NCBI GenBank assembly: GCA_028023455.1
Contig: JAQFVV010000003.1
Location: 29,760,001-29,824,000 of the forward strand
Direction: 5' to 3'
DNA length: 64,000 nucleotides
From: Epiperipatus broadwayi
Lineage: Eukaryota; Animalia; Onychophora
The notes beneath the pieces are model-generated. The model made no database searches, had not been told where the DNA came from, and saw nothing but the letters and a program-made list of their open reading frames with translations. Of the stretch, positions 14,107-59,520 are shown one piece after another; position 1 is the stretch's first letter, and every line of letters starts with the position of its first letter. Made by a program: the position numbers and the translations under genes.

Positions 14107-15998
14107 TATATTATATTGCTAAGAACTACATGTAAAATTGTTGTCTAAAATTATTAAAACAAAATCTTATAATTAAATAACTAAAAGATTTTGAAATTAA
14201 AACTTTGATGAATAATAAAATTACTGCAGAGTATTTTATCAAGAAATGATTGAATTAAAAATATCTCATTTAAAAGAAATAATCTATAAAAGTTTAGTTT
14301 TCTTTATATAAGCGGAGATCGCCAGGGAGGAGGGGATGGTGTTAAATGGTCATTCGTAAAGTTTTCCAAATTAATTAGAGTAATTCGGAGGGAGGGGTGA
14401 TGTAACTTAGAAAGTTTAAACTATTAAAGAAAAAAAGAAATCTAAAAACTAAAAATCTCTATTTGCATTTATTTTAAGAATAAGGGACGCCTGAATAGAG
14501 ATTGATTTTAATATAAAGAGAGTAAATGTATGTGAATAATATTAAAATAAAGGAAAGCTTATAATTAAATTTTAAAATTCCCTTAAAGATTGCATAACTG
14601 ATAGGCTGCATAGGAATGGGATTAGCAATGATTACTAATTAATCAAAATTCATAAGCAACAGAACTAATTAAAAATGCATCTCATCCAAAATTTGATCAA
14701 CATAAGCAGTGGATAGATTTTGAACAATGAAAATAATTAGCGGATTTAAAATTAATTAAAAGATAACAACAAGATAGCATCACATAAATAGGGCTGCAAA
14801 TTTCATCATTCAGTCATTCATGTGTCTAGATTCAATCACCTATTAGATTTAATTTTCAATGAATACAATGCTGTATAAAGCAGATGTGAGAGCATGCGAC
14901 CGAGCTCCAGCCTTCATCTGCAAAAACAGCAGTCTGCCCAATAAAAGCCATGCCCATCTAATAATTTGAAGCCACCAAGAATGTCTAACAGCCTGAAATA
15001 GAAGTAGCCCAGAACTGCAATCATCAGGACCACACCAAAAGCCTAAACTCCAACGAGTTGGTAAAACACACATGCAGCAGCAAAGAACAAGAAGCCACCG
15101 TGTTTAAAATCCTACAGGTAATAACATTTTCTTATTCCCACTCCTGATTTTTTTATATTAATCTATAAGTAGCCATTGCAATCTTTGAGTATCCTCAGAG
15201 CCAGCATATAATAAACTATAGCATGTGTGGGTTCATGTGTTTCCTAAAGTATCAAATAAATAGTTACAGAGCTTTCAAATCATGAAATAATTTGTTGTAA
15301 TTTCAAGGTTGTGTGTGCTCCATCCATATAGTGTTTATATTACATTATTATTGTATGTTTTATTACGAATGTGTGTAGTTATTATATATAAAATTGTTTA
15401 TTTAATTAAAAATTTATAAAATTAGTTTACAAATTATAGTAAACATTTTATATAAAATAAAGTATTTGTCTATCAATTACTGTCGGTCAATTCTTTAATT
15501 ACACCACTAAGATCAATTTAGTAAAGAACTTATACAAGCAGTTTATTGAATTATATTTCCATTGAGCTAGTTGGGATTTCTTAGGCACTGAATTAGTTTG
15601 CCATCATTCAGGGCATGTTATTGTTAACTGCTTATAGTTAGCTGGTGCCTGAAGCTTCAAAACAAATAAAGTGCTTTGAATGACGGGTTGAATTCAGCAG
15701 CTGAGAAGATCTGTGGCCTGGAAAGGTGGTTATGGTTATATATATCTTATATAACTTTGGCCTGGCCATAGGTATCCTCTGGTATTATGCTTTTCCACCT
15801 AAGGGGCCGGTGTGATGTAATACTTAAATTGCAGCTGGAGCAGATCGAATTTATAATAAATAATGTTATAATATAGTCATTTTTCTATAAAATAAGTCAA
15901 CAATTTCTTTTACAATTTTGCTTATCACAATTTTTTATTAAAGAGTAAAAATTTTATAATATATATATTTTTATTTGATCTATCTCCCACCCAGTTCA
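14107..15998 (+). repeat. 5' LTR of element A
   Basis: Colinear with 20980-23092 (for example CTACATGTAA..GTCTAAAATTATT..AAACTTTGATGAATAATAAAA through TATCTC(C/T)CACC(CA/TG)GTTCA). The start position is approximate. Confidence 0.8.
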
Positions 15999-16369
15999 TT
16001 TGGCCACTAATAAATATATATATATTATAAAACTTTTACTCTTCAATAAAAAATTGTGATAAGCAAAATTGTAAAACAAATTGTTGACTTCTTTTTTAGA
16101 AAAATGACAATATTATAAAATTATTTATTATAAATTCGATCTGCTTCAGCTACAGTTTAAGTATTGCATCACACCAGCCCCTTAGATAGAGAAGCATAAT
16201 ACCAAGCGGGTACCTATGGTCAGGCTGAAGTTATATAAGGTATATATAACCATAACCACCTTTTCAGGCCACAGATCTTCTCAACTGCTGAATTTACTTC
16301 TGTCATTCAAAGCACTTTAATTGTTTCAAAATAAACTTCAGGCATCAGCTAACTACAAGAAGTAGTTAG
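15625..16369. repeat. Large inverted repeat (fold-back) with about 350-bp arms and about 30-bp spacer
   Basis: About 16009-16369 is the reverse complement of about 15625-15976 (for example GCACTTT/AAAGTGC, CCACAGATCTTCTC/GAGAAGATCTGTGG, TTGTGATAAGCAAAATTGTAAAA/TTTTACAATTTTGCTTATCACAA). Confidence 0.9.
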
Positions 16370-20979: not shown

Positions 20980-23102
20980 TGTAATGTACCACTAATGAAT
21001 AGTGCTACATGTAACATTGTCTAAAATTATTGAAACAAAATCTTATATTTAAATAAAAAGATTTTGAAATTAAAACTTTGATGAATAATAAAATCATTGC
21101 AGAGTATTTTATCAAGAAATGATTATCAATTAAAAACATCTCATTTAAAATAAATAATCTATAAAGGTTTAGTTTTTTTATATAAGTGTAGATCGCCAAA
21201 GGGCAAACGTCATTTATTAATATAAGTTGTACTAGTTTAAAGTAATAAAAAACAATTAGAGAGGTCATTAACAGTCATTCATAATGTTTTACAAATTATA
21301 GTAATTCAGAGGGAGGGGGAATGTAACTTAGAAAGTTTAAACTATTAAAGAAAAAAAAGAAATCTAAAAACTAAAAATCTCTTTTCATTTATTTTAAGAA
21401 TAATGGATGTGTGAATAGAGATTTATTTTAAATATAAAGAGAGTAAATGAATGTGAGTAAATAAAATATGAAAGTTAAATATTAAAATAAAGTAACATTT
21501 ATAAACTGGATTCCAAGAGATTGTAAAAGACCCAGAAAGAGACTACATGTGAGATGGATGGATGAAATAAGAAAGTGTGCAGGGGTGATGTAGAGAAGAG
21601 AAGCTAAAGATCGAAGAAGATGGATTAAACTTGGAGAGACCTTCATCCTGCAGTGGATTGATAATGGATGATAATGATGATGATAATTTTAAAATTCCCT
21701 CAAAGATTGCATAACTGGTAAGCTGCATAGAAATGGAATTAGCAATGGCTACTAATTAATCAATTAAAGTCCATAAGCAACAGAACTAATTAAAAATGCA
21801 TCTTATCCAAAATTTGATTAATATAAGCAGTGGAGGGATTTTGAACAATGAAAATAATTAGCGGATTTAAAATTAATTAAAAGATAACAACAAGATGGCA
21901 TCACATAAATAGGGCTGCAAATTTCATCATTCAGTCATTCACATATTTAGACTCAATCACCTATTTAGTTTTCAATGAATACAAAGCCATACTAAGCAGA
22001 AGTCAGAGCATGCAACCAAGCTCCAGCCTTCATCCACAAGAACATCAGCAGTCTGTGTGATAGAAGCCATGCCTATCTAATAATTTGAAGCCACCAAGAA
22101 TGTCTAACTGACTGAAATAGAAGTAGCCCAGAACCACAATCATCAGGACTGGACCAGAAGCCTAAAATCCTACCAGTTGGTAAACCATACATGCAGCAGC
22201 AAAGAGCAAGAAGCCACATTTAAAATCCTATAGTAATAACATTTTCTTATTCCCTTTCCTGATTTTTTTATATTAATCTATAAGTAGCCATTGCAATCTT
22301 TGAGTATCCCCAGAGCCAGCATTTAACGAACTGTAATATGTGTGGGTTCACGTGTTTCCTAAAGTAGCAAATAAATAGTTATAGAGGTTTCAAATCATGA
22401 AATAATTAGCTGTAATTCCAAGGTTGTGTGTGCTCCATCTGTATAGTGTTTATATTACAATATTATATGTTTTATTAAAAATGTGTGTAGTTATTATATA
22501 TAAAATCATTGTTTATTTAATTAAAAATTTATAAAATTAGTTTACAAATTATAGTAAACATTTTATTTAAAATAAAATATTTGTCTGTCAATTACTGTCA
22601 GTCAATACCACTATGAACAATGTAGCAATGAACTTATACAAGCAGTTTATTGAATTATATTTCCATTGAGCTAGTTGCGATTTCTTAGGTGCTTAATTAG
22701 TTTGCCACCATTCAGGGCATATTAACTACTTCTTGCAATTAGCTGGTGCCTGAAGTTTACTTTAAAACAAATAAAGTGCTTTGAATGACAGGGGTTGAAT
22801 TCAGCAGCCGAGAAGTTCTATGGCCTGAAAAGATGGTTGTTGTTATATATATCTTATATAGCTTCAGCCTGGCCATAGGTACCTTCTGGGTATTATGCTT
22901 CTTTGCCTAAGGAGTCGGTGTGATGCAATACTTAAAGTGCAGCTGAACAGATTCAGTTTATAATAAATAATTTTATAATATTGTCATTTTTCTATAAAAG
23001 AAGTCAACAATTTATTTTACAATTTTGCTTATCACAATTTTTTATTAAAGAGTAAAAATTATATTTCTTCAATCTATCTCTCACCTGGTTCAATATATTA
23101 CA
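20980..23102 (+). repeat. 3' LTR of element A
   Basis: Follows the PPT, has TGTAAT...ATTACA inverted termini, and is homologous to 14107-15998. The end could alternatively be 23092. Confidence 0.8.
21505..21682 (+). mobile_element. 5'-truncated RTE-clade LINE 3' end
   Basis: WIPRDCKRPRKRLHVRWMDEIRKCAGVM*RREAKDRRRWIKLGETFILQWIDNG* followed by a (TGA/TAA)n tail. It is absent at the equivalent point of the 5' LTR (about 14565). Confidence 0.8.
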
Positions 23103-29500: not shown

Positions 29501-32500
29501 CCTAGCCAATATATCTGGGTTAGTATTATCCATAATGCTAAAATTTTAGTATAATAAATATTAAACAAAAATATTTTTCAACAAATATATTTATCAAAGA
29601 TCAGAGTAGTCCAGAGCCTGTCTTCTTCTCCATTGCTGCCTATAAATATAGTCCTCAAAATAATTATATATAATGTACTGGTCTAAAAATGTATGTTTAT
29701 CCAACAAGACCTAGAAGAAGAGCAAAGTACCTCGAACCCAACCATGTACAAGATACACAGATCAGGTACATCATGGATTCTGCTCTATTTACCCATTATT
29801 CCACATCTAAGACATAATTAACATTTCCCAAAGATCATCATACATTCTTAGTTATACCAGCCTGGAGCCAAGCCCCAGAGCATAATATTCAGAATGATGA
29901 TGATGTTCACTGAGATCTTGAGTGACCCCTTCTAGTTTAACTTAACTTATAAGTAACAACGAAAATGAAAATAATTAAATGATTCGAACACTGGAAGTTT
30001 TATATATAAATATATATTTTAGACTATTAAAAATATTAAGTTACAATTACTCAAGCTTATGGACCAATGGTATACATTAATTTATTATTTCTATATATAA
30101 TTTTAAACAAGATTGCTTCACGATGTGACTACATATATATAAACAGCGATCATTTTATTAGCTTATTACATTATTTGCAAAAAAATAAATGAAATGGAAT
30201 TTTTAAATTAAAGTTTCCATCTACATTTATTACAAAATAGATTTTCTTTTCAATCAGCATATTTACAATTTACTGACTGATTGTACATAAAATAACAATT
30301 CCCCCTTTTTTTTTATTTAAATCATCCCAGAAAATAAAAAAAATGTCAAAGACTATAAAAAAACAGTTTGCCATTTCTACAGGGTTTAAAATGACAAGAT
30401 TAAAACATGCTATTTTACATTTTTTATGAAGGCAGATTTTTATCAAAATAATATTTTTATTTAATATGGACCTTACTGGAACAGCACCAAGTTATTTATA
30501 ATAACTTTACAATCCCCAGCATTATAATTTGCCATTTGATCATTTATATAATAACATTCATAATTTAGTTAATAAGAAGATCTAACTGAAAAACCATAAG
30601 CAAAAGAGAAAATTAGTTACTCAGGTTGAATATTCTTGACATTGGTAGAATCATTTCTTTATGGCTTACGTAATAGATAGACATTAAAACAATGAATAAA
30701 CTTGGGGTAATAATATGAATGCATAAGAAAATATAGGTTAATACAAGCCGATTTACAGGACACTCATACTCCTACTGCCACGAGAAGGGTTGGTATGTCC
30801 AGGATATTGCGGAACAATACTGAATGAAAATATAGGTTTTATTGGTGTACTATGTCCGACATACGGATATCATGCAGACCACTATTGACTACTTCACTTA
30901 TTCTCTGGAACACAGCAGTATGTGCTACTGGGAACAAGATTGTACAGAATAAAAATGATCTTTTATAGATCCACTCCAACACGCTCAGCATTCATTATTA
31001 ACCTAATTACTTATTTATCACAAAATATATGGATAATTATAATTGGGGAGCCTTAAATAACCTAATACAGCATAAATATCAACCTGCGCAATCAATTCCT
31101 TCATGTGAAAACGTTTACTTATAATAAATAATAAATATATCTTAAATAAATTACCCCTCCCCCTTTTTCTGCATTTAATTCTAAAAAAATATTGCATGAT
31201 AATAACCAATGCTATCCAACAGCACTTTCTAGGTCAATTATAATATATATTTCATTTCTATTCCATTCAAAAAAAATACATTTATAAAAAATAAAAAAAA
31301 TCTCATTTCTAAAATCATTAGCAAACATTAAATAAAGTTACTAATGTAAACACATTTTTATTACAGATATTTCAAACAACTTCACAAGCTAGTCAAAGAA
31401 AACAACTTATTTTTGCTTTCTACTTAATTTCTCTTCTAACACCCCCTTCTTATGATACTTTGCTATTACACAAATTATCATATTAAAATCCCCACTTGTG
31501 AAGTTGGTTCAATAAAGTCATAGAAATTATACTATGAAATTATTACAAAAACAAATAAATAGCATATTAAAAATAACAATTATAAGAAAATATATATATA
31601 TGTGTTGTGAGCTTGAGTTATCAAAGAATAATTACAAATAAATTAGATAGGGTTAGAAAGTCGATTACAGGAAAAGGCTTAAACATTAAATTTAAATATC
31701 TACATTTAAATTAATATTAATTTTAGAAATATAGGTCTATTAAATAAAAAGATTTAAAAATGTAAGACAAGATATGGAGTCTTGGTGGTTCATAAGACTC
31801 ATTACCTCAGAATTCCCTGGAGCGATGGTACATGTGAACTCTTATGGCTTGTGGCATTCTTCAGGGATAGGACTATAGCAGAGGCATAGCTAGGAGACAG
31901 GATTCAGAGAGAAAGGTGGTGATATTCTCTTTCTACTCACTTTTCATTTTCAGGTTCAAAATTGGCATAGTGACTGGTGGCAACTCTTGTTCCAAAAACC
32001 CCTATTTATATTCTCTAGCATTTAAACTATTTGCTATCTGAATCAATGGTTTATTTTTGAAGAATTGTTTACTTCCAACATTCATTTAAACAATGTAGAA
32101 CTTCCATTAATGGGTTAATGGAAATTTCAAAGTATTTGATTTTTTAATATATTTAAAGGCAGGTTGTTTCACATATATAATTTGAAGTCCCCCCCCCCCC
32201 CCATTTAAAACTGTCGAGATAAAATAAAAAAAGCTGACACAGTTTTCAAAAATAAAAGTTAAAACAAAGAAATAAAAAGATGATAGCAATTTAAAAATTA
32301 ATATTTTAAAATATTAAAAGTACTGTTAAAGTGTTTACAGATTATCAAAAAGAAGGCTGTATTTAACAATTAATAAAAAAAAAAGATTGCAGTGGCCATA
32401 AAAACCAATAGATGTTTTTTAAAAACATCAGATAAGAGTTATTATAATCTGTTCCCACCAAAAATAGATGGCCAATGAGGAAAGAAAATAAACACATGGG

Positions 32501-33304
32501 CCTCTGAGAAGATTGGTGTTAGATCAATCCCAAAAACAGATAAGAAAAGCATAAAGAAATAAATAGGGGAGTAGAGATTGCTTAAGAGATTTTTGTAGCA
32601 GACATATGGTTAGAAAGTATCAAGACTTATTAGTGAAATCCATATTATATGACTGCTAGCCCAACAAAGCTTGGAGCACTGAATAATAAAAAGGAATCTA
32701 TAACTAAAAAAATATTAAATGAAACAAGTGGTTAAAATATATCTTCAAATGTCTGGGTAAAAAATAGCTTTCTCCTTTGCCCTCTGTTCAGTTATGAAGT
32801 AAAATAAAATCAAGGCCTGTGAACTGACCATCGACTTGTTAAGCTCTCAGAACACCCCTCATTGATTGGAAAATTTATAGTGAATCACCAGCAGATGTAG
32901 GTTCAGATAGGGAAATTGTACATCTTTTATAGCTTTTTATAATAAGTAAAAATATTTTGCAAATTGTATTTCTTAAATTAAAATATAATATGAAATGTTG
33001 CTTTTAAATTAATTGATTGCAAGTAATACAAAAAGGAAATATATTTAAAAATGGAACACAATAGAGTAATAGGTGAAGTAAAAATATTTTGTATGATGTG
33101 TTTATTAAGATAATCTATGATTTAATAAAATGTCATTTTCTGGATTGATTGATTATTAAAATGCTTCCAAATAATAAAAAAAATATTTATTCAGAATAAT
33201 GGTTATTATTTTATAAAAAAAAAATTTGATAGAATGAATTGCCTCTGGAACCACACATACATAAATTAAGGAAATGTTTATATATGTGAATTAAGGAATA
33301 ATAT

Positions 33305-33700
33305 AATCTCTTCCAAATAATGATTTCAAAATGTATTGATATGATGAATAAGTGGTTCAAACCCACATTGAATATATTAAGTAATAATATAATGTTCTTT
33401 CAAATAATGACTTCAAACTATTGATATGATTAATAAGTAGTTCAAACTCACACTGAATATATTAAGTAATAATAAATCTCTTCCAAATAATGATTTCAAA
33501 CTATTAAAATGGTGAATAAGTGGTTCAAACCCACACTGAATATTAAGTAATAATAAATCTCTTTCAAATAATGACTTCAAAATGTATTGATATGATGAAT
33601 AAGTGGTTCAAACCCACACTGAGTATATTAAGTAATATCTTCCCAATAATGACTTCAAATTGTATTGATATGATAAATAAGTGGTTCAATCCCATACATA
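33305..33700. repeat. About 84-bp minisatellite (about 5 units) in the 5' LTR of D
   Basis: Unit approximately TTCCAAATAATGAYTTCAAA(A/C)TGTATTGATATGATKAATAAGTGGTTCAAACCCACACTGAATATATTAAGTAATAATAAATCTC, with starts near 33311, 33398, 33481, 33562 and 33640. Confidence 0.9.
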
Positions 33701-34380
33701 TGATATGTAAAATAAAAATAAATACTTTGGGATTTCTGGATTAAAACATATTTCTCAATACCCGGATTAAAATAAGTACTTCAAGATACTTGGCTAGAAT
33801 AAATATTTCAAGATACCTAAATAAAGTAATTACTTCTATACACATGGATACATAACTATGCAGATGAGGGAGCTTCAAACCTAAAAGGACAATTCCCACT
33901 AAGGAACAATAAAAAAACATCTGTAATTTGCACACAGATACGAAGACAGCCAGTATAGAGACTGTCAGCAAACTTTTCTTTCTTCTTCAAGAACTTTATA
34001 AGTCATATTGTTATTAAATAAAATTATTGTTTTAAAATAAATAATATCTTTTGTCAATTTCATGTGCATCATCCATCCATTTATGCACTGGTTCACAAGA
34101 ATCTCATGCCTCCTGAGCTAGGTTCAGCATAAGCAGACCATGGTAAGGAAGGTTGTAGTGAGATGGAACTCTAGTTGTGCCATTTGGGAAACCAAACATA
34201 AATTTCTAGATGCTTCCAGTTTCTATGATGTTACATCCTCTGATGAGCAGAAAATATTGTTGTAGGTGGGGCAACATCTGCATTGGGGAATGTTAATCAA
34301 TAGTTTCTTCCTGCAATATGCTCATCAGGAAATAGTTACAACGGATGTAAAGAAGTTGGATGATCTTATCCAGTTATATT

Positions 34381-34436
34381 TTGTGCCCAATATGGAGTTC
34401 AAAACCATGATCCTGAGATTAAGAGTCTCATGCTCT
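34381..34436 (+). other. Extended primer-binding site: 56-nt complement of tRNA-Lys(CUU) positions 76 to 21
   Basis: 46/56 identity to the reverse complement of the recalled conserved animal tRNA-Lys-CTT, with the last 25 nt identical (CCTGAGATTAAGAGTCTCATGCTCT). Mismatches are mostly transitions, several at CpG. Confidence 0.85.
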
Positions 34437-36469
34437 GGTTATCATCTATTTAAACTACATTTATTTCTTTGCTATATTTACTCTTTGACAACTTTTTACT
34501 TTTATTATTTAATAAGCTTTTCTCTCTCTCTCCACATCACAGTTCAGCTTCATCTTCTTTCTCATGCCTGTTTTGTTCTTATTGCCATTTACTTTACTTA
34601 GCTCTTTTAAATTTCTCTTATCTTTTTTTCTGATTTATTTCACATCCCCATACAATGTGCAATGTTCACATCTACAGAATCATAATTGCACCTGCCTTGT
34701 ACACTTCTTGTTCAGCTGTTTTTTACTTCTAAAGGCATTCTAACCAGATTGAGTAGGACAGGTCATGTGTGAATTTGTACTTTTCATGTTTATGTTGGGT
34801 ATAGCAGGGCTGCCTGGATGCAGTGTTCATGAGGATCTGAAGTATAGGCTTAGCACTGTGTAGACCTAGATGTTGAGCTCCCAGAGTAGTCCAGTGGTGT
34901 ATATGTAGGCCTCATAAATAGGCCTTGGTCTCATGAATAGACCTCATCTACTCACAAGAGATGAACAGGACTGGCTCAATGCCTGATATTTTTTTTGGGA
35001 TACTACTTGTGGTTAATCTGTCTAGGTACTTAGAAAGGGCAGTGCTTAAAAATGAGGTATTTTTTCATGATGTCATGGTGCCTTGTGTGCTGGTAGTCCA
35101 TGCTTGGCTGTCTATTTATCCTGACATTGGAGGCTGCAGTTCACATACTCATTTTTCCCATCTCATTTTACCTATTCATCAGTGTATCTCACACCAAGTA
35201 AAGACCTGACAATAATAAAATGGATAGTGTGTGGAATGAAATTGTATTTCCAGGCAATTTCATTCCAAAATTTAGCGGGGGGGGGGTAAGGAAACAGACA
35301 GGTTGTTTCACATATATAATTTGAAGTTCTCCCCCCCCAATTTAAAACTGTCGAGATAAAATAAAAAAAGCTGACACAGTTTTCAAAAATAAAAGTTAAA
35401 ATGAAGAAATAAAAAGATGACAGCAATTTAAAAATTAATATTTTAAAATATTAAAAGTACTGTTAAAGTGTTTACAGATTATCAAAAAGAAGGCTGTAAT
35501 TAACAATTAATAAAAAAAAAGATTGCCATCAAAATCAATAGATGTTTTTTAAAAACATCAGATAAGAGTTATTAGAATCTGTTCCCACCAAAAACAGATG
35601 GCCAATGAGGAAAAAAAATAAACACATAGATCTCTGAGAAGATTGGTATTAGATTGATCCCAAAAACAGAGATAAGAAAAGCATAAAAGAGATAAATATA
35701 AAAAAAGCATAAAGAGATAAATAAGAGAGTAGAGATTGCTTAAGAGATTTTTGTAGCAGACATATGGTTAGAAAGCATCAAGACTATTATTAGTGAAATC
35801 CATATTATATGACTACTAGCCCAATAAAGCTTGGAGCACTGAATAATAAAAAGAAGGAACCTGTAACTAAAAAAGTATTAAATGAAGAAACAAGTGGTTA
35901 AAATGTATCTTCAAATGTCTGGGTAAAAAATAGCTTCCTCCTTTGCCATCAGTTCAGTTATGAAGTAAAATAAAATCAAGGCCTGGGAACTGACCATTGA
36001 CTTGTTAAGCTCTCAAAACCCCTCATTGATTGGAAAATTTATAGTGAACCACCAGCAGATGTAAGTTTCGGTAGGGAAATTGTACATCTTTTATAGCTTT
36101 TTATAATAAGTAAAAATATTTTGCAAATTGTATTTCTTAAGTTAAAATATAATATAATGAAATGTTGTTTTAAATTAGTTGATTGTAAGTAATACAAAAA
36201 GGAAATATATTTAAAAATGGAATGCAGTGGAGTAATAGGTGAAATAAAAATATTTTGTAAGATGTGTTTATTAAGATAATATATAATTTAATAAAATGTC
36301 ATTTTCTGGATTGATTGATTATTAAAATGCTTCCAAATAATAAAAAAATATTTATTCTGAATAATGGTTATTATTTTATAAAATTTTTTTTTGATAGAAT
36401 GAATTGCCTCTGGAACCACACATACATAAATTAAGAAAATGTTTGTATATGTGAATTAAGGAATAATAA

Positions 36470-37205
36470 TATCTTTTCCAAATAATGATTTCAAAATGTA
36501 TTGATATGATGAATAAGTAGTTTAAACCCACACTGAATATATTAGATAATAATATAATGTCTTCCAAATAATGACTTCAAACTGTATTGATATGATTAAT
36601 AAGTGGTTCAAACACACACTGAATATATTAAGTAATAATAAATCTCTTTCAAATACTGACTTCAAATGGTATTGATATGATAAACAAGTGGTTGAAACCC
36701 ACATTAAATATTAAGTAATAATAAATTTCTTCCAAAGAATGACTTCAAACTGTATTGATATGATTAATAAGTGGTTCAAACCCACACTGAATATATTAAG
36801 TAATATACATCTCTGCCAAATAATGATTTTAAACTGTATTGACATGGTGAATAAGCAGTTCAAACCCACACTGAATATTAAGTAATAATAAATCTCTTCC
36901 ATTTAATGACTTCAAACTGTATTAATACGATTAATAAGTGGTTCAACTCCACACTGAATATATTAAGTAATAATAAATCTCTTCCAAATAATGATTTCAA
37001 ACTGTATTGAAATGGTGAATAAGTGGTTCAAACCCACTCTGAATATATTAAGTAATAATAAATCTCTTTCAAATAATGACTTCAAAATGTATTGATATGA
37101 TGAATAAGTGGTTCAAATCCACACTGAATATATTAATAATAAATCTCTTTCCAATAATGACTTCAAATTATATTGATATGATAAATAAGTGGTTCAAACC
37201 CACAC
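36470..37205. repeat. About 84-bp minisatellite (about 9 units) in the 3' LTR of D
   Basis: Same unit as 33305-33700, with starts about every 83-86 bp from 36476 to 37150. Confidence 0.9.
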
Positions 37206-38169
37206 TTTTATGATATGTAAAATAAAAATAAATACTTTGGGATTCCTGGATTAAAATACATTTCTCGATACCTGGATTAAAATAAGTACTTCAAGATACT
37301 TGGATAGAATAAATACTTCAAGATACCTAAATAAAGTAATTACTTCTATGCACATGCATACGTATCTATGCAGATGAGGGAGCTTCAAACCTTAAAGGAC
37401 AATTCCCACTAAGGAACAATCAGAAAAACATCTGTAATGTGCACATGGATATGAAGACAGCCAGTATAGAGACTGTCAGCAAACTTTTCCTTCTTCTTCA
37501 AGAACTTTATAAGTCATATTGTTATTAAATAAAATTATTGTTTTAAAATAAATAATACCTTTTGTCAATTTCATTTGTGTCATTCATCTATTTATGCACT
37601 GGCTCACAAGAATCTCATGCCTCCTGAGCTATGTTCAGCATAACCAGACAATGGTAAGATGGAACTCTAGTGGTGCTATTTGGGAAACCAAACACATAAA
37701 TTTCTAGATGCTTCGTGTCTCTATAGGCTACATCCTCTGATGAGCAGGAAATATTGTTGTAGATGTGATAACATCTGCATTAGGGAATGCCACTCGATAT
37801 TTCATTCCTGGAATATGCTCATCAGGAAATAGTTACAACTGATATAAAGAGGTTGGATGATCTTGTACGGTTACAATAATGATCAATGGTTTATTTTTGG
37901 ACAATTGTTTACTTCCAACATTCATTTAAACAATGTAGAACTTCCATTAATGGGTTAATGGAAATTCCAAAGTATTTGATTTTTATTCTTTAAATTTTTA
38001 ATATATTTACAATGCGTTTCCGCGTTGACTTTTATTTTAAAAATCCTTTGATTCTAATAAATAATAAAACAAACATATATATAAAAAAGTAAGAAATCTT
38101 CTGTTCGAATTTTATTATTAAAAATGCATTATCTTGTTATATATCTTAAAGGAAAAAACAATATTATAT

Positions 38170-45521: not shown

Positions 45522-46355
45522 TTTCTGAAAAAAACTTTTTATTTAATTTTCAGCACAATATACTACCAACTTTAATTCTCACTATGATTACTATTTCTCT
45601 GTTGACCCGTTTCTTTTTCTCTTTATGACTTTAATGAGATAAACCATCCCTCTCTCCTAGAACTATTCTATCACATCACTAAGCCTGCTCCCTATTTAAT
45701 TGGCATCATGATCTGTCTCTTATCACTAGTCTGCTGCCTTTATTGTTTACAAAATCACACTATTTGTCTCCTGACTATCTTTACATGTAATACACAAAAT
45801 TTATCCCTTTTTGACATGGTTGCTCTCCTGTGCCTGGACAGATTTGAAGTTTATCTTGCCTTTCTTTGTTGATGGCACTCTTATTAATATTATTTACTTT
45901 TACAATTTTATTTTATTTGTCTTATCGACTCTACAAAATTTCATTTATCCAGATTCGAATTTCATGTTACACTATTTTGTGTTTTATGAAATTATCTTTT
46001 TTTTGTATGAGCAACATCCAACTGTACTGCATGCTTTATTATTAATATTCAGGTCAACCAAGTCTTTTATTAATAACCATCTCTAGTTTTACAAAGCTTT
46101 CACCTAGTTATTTTTAGATATAAAATATTTTTATAGACTCAAACAATCAGAGAACATGAAAAAAAAATTTCCATAATTTTTACATCCTTATTTCTAGTTA
46201 CCATTTTATTATACAAAAAAAAACTCAGATTTTGGTTTTTTTTTTACACATTATATACCAAAATGTAAAGAGAGAATTTTTTTTATACACACATATATAT
46301 ATATTTCAACATTGGAAACATATTCATCAATCAGGGTGTGAGTATTTATTTCAAG

Positions 46356-46373
46356 GTCCCACATTGAGCGCCA
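46356..46373 (-). other. PBS of element C (tRNA-Lys CUU)
   Basis: Minus strand TGGCGCTCAATGTGGGAC versus recalled TGGCGCCCAACGTGGGGC, 15/18 identical. Confidence 0.75.
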
Positions 46374-48467
46374 AACCTGGGAAAAAATACGATATACCAG
46401 TCCAAAAATGTAAGTTTATCCAACAAGATTTAAAACAAGGGTAAAGTACTTTTGAACTCAACCATGTACAAGATACACAATTGAAGTACATCATGGATTT
46501 TGCCTTATTTACCCATTATTCCACAACTAAGACATAATTAACATTTCCCAAAGATCATATGGTACATTCTTAGTTTTACTGGCTCGGAGTCAAGCCCCAG
46601 AGTGTAATATTCAGGATGATAATGATGGTTCACTGAGACCTTGAGTGACCCCTTCTTGTTTAACTTAACTTATAAGTAACAGAGAAAATGAAAATAATTA
46701 AATGATTCAAACATTGGAAGTTTTATATATAGATATATATTTTAGATTATTCAAATATTAAGTTACAATTATTCAAGCTCATGGACCAGATGTATACATT
46801 AATTTATTATCTAGATATATAATTTTAAACAAGATCACATCATGATGTGACTACATATATATATAAACAGCGATCATTTTATTAGCTTATTACATTATTT
46901 GCAAAAAAATAAATGAAATGGAATTTTCAAATTAAAGTTTCCATCTACATTTATTACAAAATAGATTTTCTTTTCAATCAGCATATTTACAATTTACTGA
47001 CTGATTGTACATAAAATAATAATTCCCCCCTTTTTTTATTTAAATCATCCCAGAAAATAAAAAAATGTCAAAGACTATAAAAAACAGTTTGCCATTTCTA
47101 CAGGGTTTAAAATGACAAGATTAAAACATGCTATTTTACATTTTTTATGAAGGCAGATTTTTATCAAAATAATATTTTTATTTAATATGGACCTCACTGA
47201 AACAGCACCAAGTTATTTATAATAACATTACAATATTTATAACTATAAGTTGTTAAGTGGCAGTCAATTATCATGCACACAATCCCCAGCATTATAATTT
47301 GCCATTTGATCATTCATGATTTAGTTAATAAGATCTAACTTACCATAAGCAAAAGAGAAAATTAGTTAATCAGGTTGAATATTCTTGACATTGGTAGAAT
47401 CATTTCTTTATGGCTTACATAATAGATAGGCATTAAAACAATGAATAAACTCAGGGTAATTATATGAATGCATAAGAAAACTGAATATAGGTTAATACTA
47501 ATTGATTTACAGGACACTCATACTTACTTTTACTGCCACAAGAAGGGTTGATATGTCCGGGATATTGCGGAATGATACCGAATGAAGAAATAGGTTTTAT
47601 TGGTGTCCCATGTCTGGTATACAGATGTCATGCAGACTACCTTTGACTATCTCACTTATTCTTTTCACACAGCAGTATGTGCTACCAGGAACAAGATTAT
47701 ACAGAATAAAAAGGATCTTTTATAGATCCAATCCAACATGCTCGGCATTCATTATTAACCTGATTACTTATTTATCACAAAATTTATGGATAATTATAAA
47801 TGGAGAGCCTTAAATAATCTAATACAGCTTAAAGATCAACCGGCGCAAACAATTCCTTCATGTGAAAATATTTACTTATAAGAAATATATCTTAAATAGA
47901 TTATCTCCTTTTTCTGCATTTAATTTTTAAAAATATTGCATGATAATAACCAACGCTATACAACAGCACTGTTTCTATGTTAATTATAATATATATTTCA
48001 TTTCTATTCCATTCAAAAAAATCTATTTATAAAAAAAAAGTCTCATTTTTAAAATCATTAGCAAACATTAAATAAAGTTATTAATGTAAACACATTTTTA
48101 TTAAAGATATTTCAAGCAACTTCACAAATGAGTCAAAACAACAACAACTTATTTTTGCTTTCTACTTAATTTTCTCTTCTAACCCCCCTTCTTATGATAC
48201 TTTGCTATTATACAAATCATCAATTTAAAATCCCCGCTCGTGAAGTTGGTTTAATAAAGTCATAGAAATTATACTATGAAATTATTACAAAAACAAATAA
48301 ATAGCATATTAAAAATAACAATTATACTTCCGCTTTTGGCAGCCATCTTTGCAACTGGTCTTACAAAAAGCGTCCCTTAGCGATTCAATTTCAGGAAGAT
48401 AGGGACGATTGTCCCCTTACCTTTACGTTTCTTATTCAAGGTAAGTCAGTTTTAATCATTATATATT

Positions 48468-54318: not shown

Positions 54319-57300
54319 TTATCAACTCCCACCTACCCAGCATTATAGAATAGGAAATTCTAAAAGAAAATATTCATGTTTATATTAAAAATGCTTATTC
54401 CATTAAACAAGTTCTTAGAATCTCATCACTATACCTAACCACATAAGAGTATAACAATTGTACTGTCATAAGAAAATCTAGCCAGATGACAAATAGAACA
54501 TTATACAATCATATTATTGTACAATTTATTCATTTATCTATCCTTTATTAGTATGTAATCACTATTTATTGTTAATAAAATTTTTGTTGAAATGAAAAAT
54601 AACAATTATAAGAAAATATATATATATATAAGTTTTGTGAGCTTGAGTTATCAAAGAATAATTACAAATAAATTAGAGAGGGTTAGAGAATCAATTATAG
54701 GCATTATGTTTAGGCTTAAATATTAAAATTTAAATATCTACATTTAAATTAATATTAATTTTAGAAATATAGGGCTATTAAATAATAGGATTTAAGTGTA
54801 AGACAAGATCTGGAGTCTTGTCAGTTCATAAGACTCATTACCTCATAATTCCCTGGAGCGATACAGAGACAGGACTATAGCAGAGGCATAGCTAGGAAAC
54901 AGGATTTGGAGAGAAAGGCAGCAATGTTCCCTTCCTACTTGTTTTTCATTTTCAGATTCAAAATTGGTGGAGTGACTGGTGGAAACTCTATTAAAAACCT
55001 TTTTTTCTTATTCCAAAACCCCCCTATATATACTCTAGCATTTAAACTATTTGCTGCCTGAAGCAATATTCTAAATCACATCCTGCCTTGGACAAAATAA
55101 ACATACATTAATTTATATTTTTAGAAAATTCAAACCTCGATAAGAATCAATGGTTTATTTTTGGCCAATTGTTTATTTCCAACATTCATTTAAACAATGT
55201 AGAACCTCCATTAATGGATGGGTTAATGGAAATTCCAAAGTATTTGATTTTTATTCTTTAAATTTTTAATATATTTACAATGTGTTTCCGCATTGACTTT
55301 TATTTTAAAAATCCTTATCAAGGCAAACATCTTTTGGAATGCCATCTTGGATTCTAATAAATAATAAAACAAACATATATATATATATATAAAAGTAAGA
55401 AAACTTCTGTTCAAATTTTCTTATTAAAATGCATTATTTTGTTATATATCTTAAAGAAAAAAACAATATTATATATATTTGAAATAAATTATAACTGTTA
55501 ATTAAAGTGATTATGATATAAATATATTACTATTACCAATACAAGAAAAAAACATTTATATAAAACACATTTATATATACAGATTTTTTTTTTTACATTT
55601 TACATACATGGGTTGAAATCAAACCCTATTAGTAGGTGGATAAGTGAAATAAACTGTGAAATGGAAATCTGAATCAGATTTACCATTTCAATAACAAAAT
55701 CCTATCTATCTCTGCTATTATCTTTAGGGAATAATTTTTTGTGTTGCTTGCTGTTTACTCCACACAAGAGAGAAGGAATAAGACAAAATTACAAGACAAA
55801 ATTTTGTAGTCTGATTGCAAAATAATTTTCTATTAAAATTTACATCTCACTTATTGGTCATGTTTATAAAGTGACAGATTCAGGCTATCAATTATTCATC
55901 GAGCCACAGATTGGGATGCCAATTGTAACAATGTAAAGTTATTAGAAAGAATGCCCTGTACATTTGGTATCAATTTGTAACAATATGTGGGATGTTCAAA
56001 AATATGAAGTTGATTCTAATCTGTACCAAAATTCTTCATATAAATAATGAGACTTTTATATTGCTTAAATTTTATTTCTACCTCTATGTATGAAAAAGCC
56101 TTTACTGTAGAAAAAATTCATATATAAATTAAGAATGTGAAAACAAGGCTTGACAATAATATATTGAGAAATCAAATGGCAATTTTTATGAGTTTCAAAA
56201 TATATTCAAAGAATTAAATAATTTATAATTTCAGGTAAATCTAATACAAATTAAACCTGACGTGATTGAAGCTAGTCTTAATAAGTGAACATAGGGAAAT
56301 AAAACAATGACAAAATAAATTAATAAGAAATTATCCATATTTTATTTACAAGTATTAAAAAAGAAATTAAAGAAGGAAATGATAAATCAGTCAGATTTTA
56401 ACAACTTTGATTATTTATAAAAGTATTAGTCCATAAATTTATTTACAAAAAGAATTAAAATAAATATCAAAATAGATCTCATAAATTGAATATGGTAAGT
56501 TATTTCTTTTTGTTTTAATCCTTTGTTTGTTTTGCTGCAAAAAACATATATAAATGTAGACTAACTGTCTATCCATTCTCCCAAACACTATTGATGTGCA
56601 TGTGTACATAAAACAATGTTATATTCAAAAATTTTAAATTACCTGACTTTGTAACAGATTCTGTAGAAGTTTTAAATATTCCAAAAAATACATGCATCAT
56701 CATCATCATAATAATAAATTAAGTTCATTATTATTATTGACTAAAGTCCAAATTTTTTTCTTTTAAAGATCATATAAGAAGTTCTTTGTTTTGATTTCTA
56801 GGATTAGTGAAGTTTGACATTAAAGGCAATTGAATTTCTTTTAAGATTGTAATTTAACCTTGATGGGATTTTATTGCCATTGTGGTTTAAACAGGATATT
56901 GCAATACTTCTAAGAAATTCAAGCTTGATTATTCTGAAGAGAATTAATAATTTTTTTCCTAAGAGTTTTCCTTTAGTAACAGTAGATTGCTTTTATTTTT
57001 AATTACAACTTTCTTTAATTTTAATTTCTCCCAGAAATTTTATTATAGGATTATTGTTACAATTATAATTACTTTACTGAGTAGAGATAGGATCTCATTG
57101 AATGCATAGACATAGCTTTGGAAAGTATCAAGCAATCAGATCCTTTCTAATTTTGTCAGCCTATTTAGCCAGTCATTTAGAACACTATGAAAGAAAACAT
57201 CTGAAGTTTACAGCAATTGGTTTAAGAAGTAAGAAAACATTTTTTTCTATCATATATTAGCATATTTTTCTATTATGTGTTCATGTAGACATTGTTGTAA

Positions 57301-57787: not shown

Positions 57788-59235
57788 AAGATAAATTAAA
57801 TAATTTTACACAAAATTAGATAAAAATTTAATACAATGAATTCCTAAGATGTGTATGTTTATTCTGATTAAATTCACACATACAGAAATAACGTAACTTA
57901 GTTTATATTAAATAAAATTTGGATTATGATTAAATTTTGCTTTGATATTTATTTATAATGCTTTAAAGTAAACATTCCAAAATAACTATGGACTAATTAG
58001 TTAATAGTCAAAATAAATAAACTAGCGTAAAAATGAGATAATGTAATATAATTTTTTTTCACACGTAAATGTAATTTAGGATATTGTTATAATATATATA
58101 GAACAGATGGATGGATAACTAAAGATATAATAGTGAAATTAAATTATACTAATTTATTTAATTAATTAAGAAAAAAATATATTTATAAGGTATATATTAA
58201 TAATGTGGCAAAATAATAATTTGTAATTGTATATTTTTATTAAGCATTTATTTTTTATAACAAAAATGAGTATTTAATATTCAGATAGAAGACATATCCT
58301 TATATTATTTGAATTTGGGCCCATTCAAATAACAACTTTTTTTTCCAACAAAAAAAAAATAAAAAATTTTGAAATACATTTTCCCTGAAATAAATATTGA
58401 GATAAAAACAACAATATTATATTTACAATTTTTTTAAAATTATAAATTGAGCTGCTGTATTTGTTTATAAATATTTCAGACATGCAAATATATATATATT
58501 CAAATATTAATAGCCATAAATCAATGGAAAATTTATTTTATTAGGTTAATAATTAAAAAAATTATTTTTATATAAGTTAGCTAAGAAAATAATAAAACAA
58601 AATCACATTATGTTTTATCTTCCATTTACTGTATACCAGCTGGCTAATGATTTCTGTATATTGTGTCAATCGTGTTTAAATGGTACATTTCTGAAAACGT
58701 TATTTTTCCTATTGGATGAAATGATTATATGATAAGTTAGTGACATCAGGTTCTTACTCAGCACATACTGCATAAAAATTTCGAAGCTTTATTTTTTCTA
58801 AAAAAAAATTTCAGCATATAGAATGACAAGTAATTTCAAATCTTATCGATTTAAATTAGAAATAAGGAATACTAATTTTCTAGTTATTATTAATAATAAA
58901 TTGTCATCAAAACAAACAGACAATAGAATTCAATTTCTAAAACAAGATAAGTAGCATTAATATTGTCTATCTTTATATCTTGATGGTTTTTTTTTTTTCA
59001 TTTAGTATCTGGTTACCTAACAATGCTATTATCACTTTTTTAAAATATTTTTTTGGGCAATTATTCAATCTCAATACAAAGAAAAAATGTTAACAGCATT
59101 TTTGGTTACCTAAACAAAACAAAGAAATTACATAGCATTACAACTGAAAGTATGTCAAGGCTGATAACCTTCTGATTGATCATTTTCTAATGAAATAATC
59201 TGTATATTTATTTAACTAAAAAAAATTTTTTTTTC

Positions 59236-59520
<285 letters not shown>

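What the first reader, a model, noticed from the sequence alone, without database searches (positions are those of the whole stretch)
34379..34436. LTR element whose PBS is three-quarters of tRNA-Lys(CUU), ending at D20
Seen: 2 nt after the 5' LTR of D, the sequence complements tRNA-Lys(CUU) for 56 nt, through the acceptor stem, T arm, variable loop, the whole anticodon arm (AAG) and into the D arm, stopping after A21. Known: PBSs are normally at most 18 nt because plus-strand copying of the primer stops at m1A58, and position 20 is typically dihydrouridine. Inference: either the mobilising RT read through m1A58 and anticodon-loop modifications and the long copy was fixed, or this protein-less, long-LTR (LARD-like) family uses an extended tRNA duplex to compete for primer and RT. 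The transcript would also be an antisense target or sponge for tRNA-Lys fragments. The PBS of C shows a weaker possible extension (..GGGACCTTGAA..ACCCTGA). I do not recall such a PBS being described but cannot search the literature.
Basis: partly seen in the sequence, partly recalled or inferred. Interest (0 to 1): 0.75.

Follow-up and report, generated by a model that had tools for sequence, protein, structure and literature searches.

The report
Retrotransposon copy that over-copied its tRNA primer
One old, gene-less retrotransposon copy carries a 56-base DNA copy of the lysine tRNA that primed its replication. It is a fossil of a copying accident that also flipped and shortened its interior, not a new kind of giant primer site.

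Summary
Window 34381-34436 is the reverse complement of the host's mature tRNA-Lys(CUU), positions 76 to 21 including CCA. It starts 2 nt after the 5' LTR; 46 of 56 bases match and the last 25 are exact.

The long site is not a family trait. In 28 of 28 other family copies the LTR is followed by an ordinary primer site of about 22 nt (tRNA 76-55). The leader then runs in the opposite orientation to the window.

In the window copy:
- The tRNA copy runs on to position 21.
- It joins through 6 shared bases (AGAGCA/TGCTCT) to an inverted leader (34437-34753).
- That leader stops at the primer-site boundary and joins through TGAG to the 3' internal part.
- About 1.06 kb of the interior is missing.
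- Both junctions are unique in the 5.6-Gb genome.

Best reading: a one-off reverse-transcription accident. Plus-strand strong-stop DNA read past A58 and U54, stalled before U20, then switched template twice.

The "extended duplex strategy" is refuted for this family.

Genome-wide, tRNA-Lys retro-copies are common, often end at position 21, and vary at position 58 as m1A misreading would predict. This scan had noted similar accidents elsewhere in this genome. The window is not human.

The parts
32154..34378 (+). 5' LTR of element D. Homology to the 3' LTR starts at 32157. The 5' terminus is imprecise and lacks the clean TG start seen in L061.
   Evidence: Self-BLAST; termini compared with L061.
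34379..34380 (+). TT spacer between the LTR end and the primer-binding site, the same as in other family copies.
34381..34402 (+). The family's normal primer-binding site, complementary to tRNA-Lys(CUU) positions 76-55 (about 22 nt), here with CpG decay.
34403..34436 (+). An extra 34 nt copied from the primer tRNA, positions 54-21. Absent from all other family copies read.
34431..34436 (+). Junction 1: the 6-nt microhomology TGCTCT, shared by tRNA 26-21 and by the end of the family leader (..AACCAGAGCAAAA.. in sense).
   Evidence: unique in the genome.
34437..34753 (-). Family leader (the region between primer site and internal part), present in inverted orientation. It ends at the leader's first bases next to the primer site.
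   Evidence: (28/28 other copies opposite).
34750..34753 (+). Junction 2: the 4-nt microhomology TGAG between the inverted leader end and the 3' internal part. About 1.06 kb of the normal interior is missing here.
34754..35273 (+). 3' internal part in normal orientation (equals L061 4349-4880).
35274..35286 (+). Polypurine tract (AGC plus a G run), 3 nt before the 3' LTR.
35290..37875 (+). 3' LTR of D, ending ..GGTTACA.
32040..32144 (+). Left copy of a duplicated target segment of about 105 bp flanking D.
   Evidence: It is 97% identical to 37882-37984, and both match the uninterrupted repeat copy at 55140-55252.
37876..37984 (+). Right copy of the duplicated target segment.
46310..46373 (-).

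Best explanation
Element D is a defective copy of a non-autonomous, long-LTR retrotransposon family primed by tRNA-Lys(CUU). It was made by a single faulty round of reverse transcription.

Shown:
- The sequence after the 5' LTR is, in register with the family's primer site, a copy of the mature tRNA (CCA included) down to position 21.
- It is fused through 6 shared bases to the family leader in inverted orientation.
- That inverted leader stops at the primer-site boundary and is fused through 4 shared bases to the 3' internal part.
- About 1.06 kb of the interior is lost.
- No other copy in the genome has these junctions.

Inferred:
- Plus-strand strong-stop DNA (U3-R-U5) did not stop at A58 or U54 of the primer. 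It copied the tRNA until it stalled one base before U20.
- Its 3' end (..TGCTCT) could not pair with minus-strand DNA. It annealed to AGAGCA in a plus-sense leader, most likely the co-packaged genomic RNA.
- It was extended back toward the 5' end until it met the tRNA:primer-site duplex.
- It then switched at TGAG onto minus-strand DNA and ran through the polypurine tract and the 3' LTR.
- The result was a two-LTR molecule that entered the germ line.

The long site has no function of its own.
For: - Register and identity with the host tRNA.
- Normal family structure is LTR-TT-22-nt site-leader-1.06 kb-3' part-PPT-LTR with a TTAT target duplication (L061).
- Leader orientation is opposite in 28/28 other copies, and the primer site stops at position 55-59 where it is recognisable.
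- No tRNA similarity beyond the site in 8 typical copies.
- Microhomologies at both junctions.
- About 195 genome copies carry the normal leader end (..TTTTGCTCTGG..).
- The junction-1 28-mer is unique at up to 3 mismatches. A 101-nt query across junction 2 finds only the window spanning it, with all 26 candidates scored.
- Many other loci in the genome join CCA-bearing tRNA-Lys copies to inverted LTR ends, so this genome's RTs do over-copy this primer.
- Literature: without a stop at m1A58 or U54, plus-strand DNA runs on into the tRNA and loses complementarity for strand transfer, and retroviral complementarity commonly extends to one base before position 54 (PMC8599865; PMC13191261).
Against: - The first 31 nt of the copy carry all 10 mismatches and the last 25 carry none. 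CpG decay explains about half. The rest may mean part of the site came from an already diverged parental primer site (L030 shares the TTGTGCCC start), which the simple single-strand model does not predict.
- The element is flanked by a target duplication of about 105 bp and has an imprecise 5' LTR end. Ordinary integrase insertion is therefore doubtful.
- A 28-mer across junction 2 has one 3-mismatch hit elsewhere (C6223).
- The identity of the template for the inverted leader (RNA or DNA) is not testable from sequence.
Confidence: 0.78

Rival explanations
1. Post-integration DNA rearrangement. A normal D copy was inserted, and later a chromosomal break and repair event inverted the leader, deleted 1.06 kb and captured a tRNA-derived cDNA or gene fragment at the break.
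For: Short microhomologies (6 and 4 nt) are also typical of end joining or replication-based repair. The odd 105-bp flank duplication shows this locus has had unusual DNA events.
Against: The extra tRNA bases continue the primer site in perfect register, with no filler and no break. A captured fragment would have to land exactly at position 54/55 of the existing site. The inverted leader ends exactly at the primer-site boundary, which the RT model predicts and random breakage does not. Many other loci in the genome show the same tRNA 76-to-21 module on other LTR families.
Confidence: 0.1
2. The copy stops at position 21 because the primer was a 3' tRNA fragment cleaved in the D loop (positions 21-76) and the RT simply ran off its end. 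On this view no modified base at U20 blocked synthesis. This is a variant of the main model that differs only in the cause of the stop.
For: Of 29 tRNA-Lys copies selected only for an intact anticodon arm, 13 end exactly at position 21, while 14 run on to positions 1-14. That is a mixed population, as expected from a mix of cleaved and whole tRNAs.
Against: The same mixture is expected from partial modification of U20. Blocking D-loop modifications (acp3U20/20a, runs of dihydrouridine) are documented primer-extension stops (PMC7704012; PMC6895100).
Confidence: 0.25
3. Functional extended primer site. The 56-nt complement is an adaptation of this family or of a sub-lineage to bind the primer tRNA more strongly.
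For: Elsewhere in the genome a different LTR family shows the same 56-nt module in several copies with one shared junction (L034, L042, L058), so long modules can persist.
Against: None of 28 other D-family copies has it. Both junctions are unique. The leader needed downstream of the site is inverted and 1.06 kb is deleted. The multi-copy case (L058) is a tandem LTR-tRNA-LTR array with units 98.5% alike, which points to DNA-level amplification rather than replication through the site.
Confidence: 0.03
4. A chance insertion of a tRNA-Lys-derived SINE or tRNA retro-pseudogene next to the LTR.
For: tRNA-Lys retro-copies are frequent in this genome.
Against: The first 22 nt are the family's own primer site at its normal place after the TT spacer. 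There is no target duplication around the segment. Positions 1-20, which carry the A box, are missing. The complement of CCA is present. The neighbouring leader is rearranged at the very same point.
Confidence: 0.03

Closest known systems
Plus-strand strong-stop read-through of the primer tRNA when the m1A58 / U54 stops fail (HIV-1 in TRMT6-mutant cells; PMC8599865)
   Same: DNA synthesis continues into the tRNA beyond position 54, and the extra tail cannot pair for the second strand transfer. The normal complementarity of this family (to position 55) matches the 'second stop before U54' described there.
   Different: Here the product is a germ-line fossil in an invertebrate-like, AT-rich animal genome, and the primer is tRNA-Lys(CUU). 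The read-through reached position 21, and the dead-end tail was rescued by two microhomology switches instead of being lost.
Cloned retroviral circle junctions carrying primer-tRNA sequence between the LTRs (Colicelli and Goff 1986, recalled from memory and not checked here)
   Same: tRNA-derived bases beyond the primer site are joined to an LTR end as a by-product of reverse transcription. The L034/L042/L058 loci (LTR-tRNA 76-21-LTR) look like this form.
   Different: The window copy is an integrated two-LTR element with an inverted leader, not an LTR-LTR junction.
Strong-stop-DNA model for tRNA-Lys-derived SINEs (Ohshima, Okada and colleagues 1993, recalled from memory; not in the searchable library)
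   Same: A tRNA-Lys with CCA is covalently followed by the complement of a U5 end, which is the arrangement seen in many loci of this genome.
   Different: The window copy has a complete 2.2-kb LTR, lacks the tRNA's promoter half, and is single-copy. It is not a SINE.
LARD / TRIM-type non-autonomous LTR retrotransposons
   Same: Long LTRs (2.2-3.2 kb), a short internal region (about 1.9 kb in L061), and no ORF of 150 aa or more.
   Different: That classifies the family, not the finding. The autonomous partner was not sought.
Defective proviruses with inversions and deletions from template switching (HIV-1 proviral surveys; PMC9278108)
   Same: Internal inversion and deletion arise during reverse transcription, with two packaged genomes as alternative templates.
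   Different: Those cases do not involve copying of the primer tRNA body.

Membership tests
LTR retrotransposon primed by tRNA-Lys | Two direct long terminal repeats | tested here: met
   32157-34367 against 35296-37864, 88-92% identity.
LTR retrotransposon primed by tRNA-Lys | Primer-binding site complementary to the tRNA 3' end, just after the 5' LTR | tested here: met
   TT spacer, then the complement of tRNA-Lys(CUU) from CCA onward.
LTR retrotransposon primed by tRNA-Lys | Polypurine tract before the 3' LTR | tested here: met
   35274-35286.
LTR retrotransposon primed by tRNA-Lys | Short (4-6 bp) target-site duplication | tested here: not met
   The window copy is flanked by a duplication of about 105 bp and its 5' end is imprecise. 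The typical copy L061 has TTAT.
Non-autonomous LARD-like family | No gag/pol coding capacity in the internal region | tested here: met
   No ORF of 150 aa or more in L061. Only short, low-complexity ORFs occur in L061 and the window interior. Only two copies were read.
Family with a functional extended primer site | The long complement is shared by other, independently inserted copies | tested here: not met
   0 of 28 copies. Junctions are unique in the genome.
tRNA-derived SINE | Complete tRNA-like head with A and B boxes at the 5' end | tested here: not met
   Positions 1-20 are absent. ARAGORN and Rfam find nothing.
tRNA-derived SINE | Own target-site duplication and many copies with the same body | tested here: not met
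   No duplication around 34381-34436. No second copy of the tRNA-leader junction.
Aberrant reverse-transcription product (primer over-copy) | tRNA bases beyond the normal site continue it in register and match the mature tRNA including CCA | tested here: met
Aberrant reverse-transcription product (primer over-copy) | Breakpoints at microhomologies and at landmarks of the replication intermediate | tested here: met
   AGAGCA at junction 1 and TGAG at junction 2. The inverted leader ends at the primer-site boundary.
Aberrant reverse-transcription product (primer over-copy) | Misincorporation at m1A58 in this copy | tested here: inconclusive
   The window copy has A at position 58. Across other copies position 58 is A10 / G7 / T9 / deleted 2.
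Aberrant reverse-transcription product (primer over-copy) | Direct demonstration of such cDNA in particles | not testable with these tools
   Needs sequencing of extrachromosomal cDNA.

The most novel reading that the evidence does not exclude
In this animal, LTR-element reverse transcriptases routinely read tRNA-Lys(CUU) past A58 and U54 and halt one base before U20. The many integrated copies would then form a fossil read-out of tRNA modification. Position 58 would record m1A58 misincorporation: A/G/T = 54/22/12 among 89 hits, and 18 of 28 non-A in an unbiased sample. A hard block at U20 would account for 13 of 29 copies ending at position 21. The stalled ..TGCTCT end would also be a recurrent source of rearranged elements: inverted leaders, LTR palindromes and tandem LTR-tRNA arrays.
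Probability: 0.5. Interest if true: 0.65.

Novelty: new member of a known kind. Interest (0 to 1): 0.42.

Why it matters
The locus is a natural, integrated example of something so far described mainly in retroviral cell culture and in vitro systems. When the stop signals in the primer tRNA are ignored, plus-strand DNA runs into the tRNA body. The resulting tail must either be lost or be rescued by illegitimate template switches.

The locus shows that such a product can still acquire two LTRs and reach the germ line. It also removes a tempting but wrong reading, a giant functional primer site.

The wider pattern could let tRNA modification status be inferred from genome sequence alone: frequent tRNA-Lys copies ending at position 21, and hypervariability confined to position 58. 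It could also explain many of the palindromic and tandem LTR structures in this genome.

Tried and rejected
- Tested whether the window is human. No Alu core within 3 mismatches, GC about 28%, assembly 5.6 Gb: not human.
- ARAGORN and Rfam on the window gave nothing.
- Considered a SINE on the minus strand and rejected it. The tRNA 3' end, not its 5' head, abuts the LTR, and the first 22 nt are the family's own primer site.
- Considered that the typical leader itself is an old decayed tRNA copy and rejected it. Eight copies score at or below the shuffle mean.
- Considered that L034/L042/L058 prove a lineage replicating through a 56-nt site. This was weakened because L058 is a tandem LTR-tRNA array with 98.5% identical units.
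- Looked for a sibling of D. The junction-1 28-mer and 22-mer searches, a gapped pattern and a 101-nt junction query found none. One 3-mismatch hit to the junction-2 28-mer (C6223) stays unread.
- Two fetched loci (L062, L063) were taken from the wrong side of their elements and were not used.
- After no further genome stretches could be cut out, so the census rests on 29 loci plus pattern counts. I did not use patterns to print extra flanking sequence.
- Literature searches for the squid SINE strong-stop paper and for Lauermann and Boeke 1997 found nothing held.
- No protein searches were run because there is no ORF worth searching.

Full report
**Origin of the window.** The window is G000:C3:29760001-29824000 of a 5.6-Gb assembly in 18,588 contigs. 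GC is 25-35% in 4-kb bins, and there is no Alu core within 3 mismatches. I do not take it for human. It is made almost wholly of nested LTR elements.

**The observation.** An exact 25-nt piece of the segment has 54 matches in the genome. Of the 29 loci fetched apart from the window's own, ARAGORN calls a tRNA-Lys(CTT) in seven. One of these (L048) is a plain gene with no encoded CCA and a T run after it.
- Against that gene plus CCA, window 34381-34436 is the ungapped reverse complement of positions 76 to 21, with 46 of 56 bases identical.
- The last 25 nt are exact. Eight of the ten mismatches are transitions, and all four CpGs are hit.
- The 34 nt beyond the family's ordinary primer site score 56 against 12.2 +/- 2.6 for shuffles (0 of 2000).

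**Anatomy of element D**.
- 5' LTR: about 32154-34378.
- TT spacer, then the tRNA copy: 34381-34436.
- Internal region: to 35289, with a polypurine tract at 35274-35286.
- 3' LTR: 35290-37875.
- The LTRs are 88-92% alike, so the copy is old.

**What the family normally looks like.** A search with 34250-34650 split into two halves that lie on opposite strands in every other locus. BLAST against 29 fetched loci and one 10-kb locus (L061) gave the normal structure:
- an LTR ending ..GGTTACA, then TT;
- a primer site of the form TGGYGCCCAACNTGGGGCTCAA;
- a leader of about 320 nt;
- about 1.06 kb of further interior;
- a 3' part of about 550 nt, the polypurine tract and the 3' LTR;
- a 4-bp target duplication (TTAT in L061).

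No ORF of 150 aa or more occurs in L061, and only short, low-complexity ORFs occur in either interior.

The normal primer site is complementary to tRNA positions 76-55, about 22 nt. This is the extent reported for retroviruses that use a second stop before U54 (PMC8599865).

In 28 of 28 loci the leader lies in the opposite orientation to the window. Where the site is still recognisable, the tRNA complement ends at position 55-59. In eight typical copies the sequence beyond it is at or below chance similarity to the tRNA.

**What is different in the window.**
- After position 55 the copy simply goes on to position 21.
- Its last six bases (TGCTCT, 34431-34436) are also the reverse complement of the normal leader's far end (..AACCAGAGCAAAA..).
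- From there the leader runs backwards (34437-34753) and ends with the leader's first bases, next to the primer site.
- Four shared bases (TGAG, 34750-34753) join it to the 3' internal part, in normal orientation.
- The 1.06-kb middle is gone.

A 28-mer across junction 1 is unique in the genome at up to 3 mismatches. About 195 copies carry the normal leader end instead. A 101-nt query across junction 2 finds only the window spanning it; all 26 candidates were scored, and the full-length leader matches among them stop within a base of the leader end.

One 3-mismatch hit to the junction-2 28-mer exists at C6223. A gapped pattern for a sibling found nothing.

**Mechanism.** The facts above are shown. 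The following path is inferred.
1. The covalent tRNA-minus-strand DNA is the normal template for plus-strand strong-stop DNA.
2. Here synthesis passed A58 and U54 and stalled one base before U20.
3. The resulting 3' tail has plus polarity and cannot pair with minus-strand DNA, as PMC8599865 argues for read-through products.
4. It can pair with AGAGCA in a plus-sense leader, most simply the second packaged genomic RNA.
5. Extension then copies the leader backwards until the tRNA:primer-site duplex. That is where the inverted segment ends.
6. A second switch at TGAG onto minus-strand DNA restores plus-sense sequence through the polypurine tract and the 3' LTR.

I rate the general class at about 0.8: a primer over-copy followed by two microhomology switches during reverse transcription. 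I rate the particular templates at about 0.5.

**Points that do not fit neatly.**
- All ten mismatches lie in the first 31 nt of the copy. CpG decay explains half of them. The rest may reflect an already diverged parental site (L030 shares the TTGTGCCC start).
- D is flanked by a target duplication of about 105 bp. The segments 32040-32144 and 37876-37984 are 97% alike, and both equal 55140-55252 in an uninterrupted copy of the host repeat. The 5' LTR end is also imprecise. Entry into the chromosome may therefore not have been ordinary integration.

**Rivals.**
- A chance SINE or pseudogene is excluded by register, by the missing positions 1-20 and by the lack of its own target duplication.
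- A later chromosomal rearrangement cannot be excluded (about 0.1). It would have to place tRNA bases 54-21 exactly in register with the existing site, and break the leader exactly at the primer-site boundary.

**Context in the genome.** Of the 29 other loci read that contain tRNA positions 21-45 exactly:
- only one is a plain gene;
- 25 or 26 carry the unencoded CCA, in most followed directly by a reverse-complemented LTR-like end, from several families;
- five are palindromes of the form LTR-tRNA-inverted LTR, with arms of 240-400 nt;
- one family forms tandem LTR-tRNA(76-21) units that are 98.5% alike.

Counting the window's own locus (29 copies once the gene is set aside), the 5' end of the copy is exactly position 21 in 13 of 29. 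It lies at positions 1-14 in 14 of them. This is far more than an even spread over 21 positions would give, even after collapsing shared junctions.

Position 58 is the only non-CpG site that varies strongly: A10, G7, T9, deleted 2. Among 89 genome hits to positions 51-76 plus CCA it is A54, G22, T12, C1. This is what misincorporation at m1A58 would leave (PMC4787781).

A stop before U20 fits a base-pair-blocking D-loop modification. acp3U20/20a and dihydrouridine runs are documented primer-extension blocks (PMC7704012; PMC6895100). Which modification this animal's tRNA-Lys(CUU) carries is unknown. A D-loop-cleaved fragment primer is an alternative.

**Earlier notes of this scan**. They describe similar accidents elsewhere in this genome: a tRNA-Ser over-copy joined to protease, inverted LTR pairs around a tRNA copy, and stacked primer sites. 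They agree with my reading but are not independent evidence. I saw comparable structures myself only in L037, L038, L039, L052, L057 and L058.

**Verdict.** The feature is real. It is a fossil of a reverse-transcription accident in one copy of a gene-less LTR family, and so a new member of a known kind. Interest is moderate for the locus itself. It is higher for the genome-wide pattern, which needs a full census and tRNA biochemistry.

Noticed in passing
window 32040-32144 and 37876-37984 (compare 55140-55252): Element D is flanked by a direct duplication of its target of about 105-120 bp (97% identity) instead of the family's 4-bp duplication. There are 7-13 filler bases and an imprecise 5' LTR terminus at 32145-32157.
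   Followed up: partly
L031-L060 (29 loci); genome pattern hits: tRNA-Lys(CUU) retro-copies with CCA joined to inverted LTR ends far outnumber plain genes in the sample. Position 58 is hypervariable (A/G/T), consistent with an m1A58 misincorporation record. Of 29 copies, 13 end exactly at position 21.
   Followed up: partly
L033, L034, L037, L050, L052, L053, L054, L059 (junction after tRNA position 21): In 8 of 12 independent junctions the cDNA strand carries a T right after ..TGCTCT, where A would be templated by U20. This could be misincorporation opposite a modified U20, an untemplated addition, or base-composition bias. It is unexplained.
   Followed up: no
L058 500-1017 and 1518-2039; also L034, L042: Tandem units of one LTR (about 960 nt) plus a 56-nt tRNA-Lys copy (76-21), 98.5% alike within L058. 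The same LTR-tRNA-TT-LTR junction occurs in three loci, which resembles a circle-junction form that was amplified.
   Followed up: partly
L037, L038, L039, L052, L057: Palindromes of the form LTR, tRNA-Lys copy, inverted LTR, with arms of 240-400 nt. L037 and L059 turn back within the anticodon arm at an AGAG microhomology, which suggests snap-back self-priming.
   Followed up: partly
window 46310-46373 (minus strand): The outer LTR element (LTRs 29681-31584 and 46400-48326) has a tRNA-Lys primer site of about 24 nt. It is followed by a possible decayed copy of tRNA positions about 53-28, with a 7-nt insertion (score 20 against shuffles 11.9 +/- 2.4; 16 of 2000).
   Followed up: partly
window 15958-16368: In the element with LTRs 14126-15957 and 21005-23064, an inverted copy of the last 342 nt of the LTR (16027-16368) sits 69 nt after the 5' LTR match. 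This looks like another fold-back arrangement. No tRNA-Lys similarity was seen in the 69-nt link.
   Followed up: partly
window 59180-59515: A tandem array of an 8-nt unit, about 40 copies.
   Followed up: no
   Followed up: no
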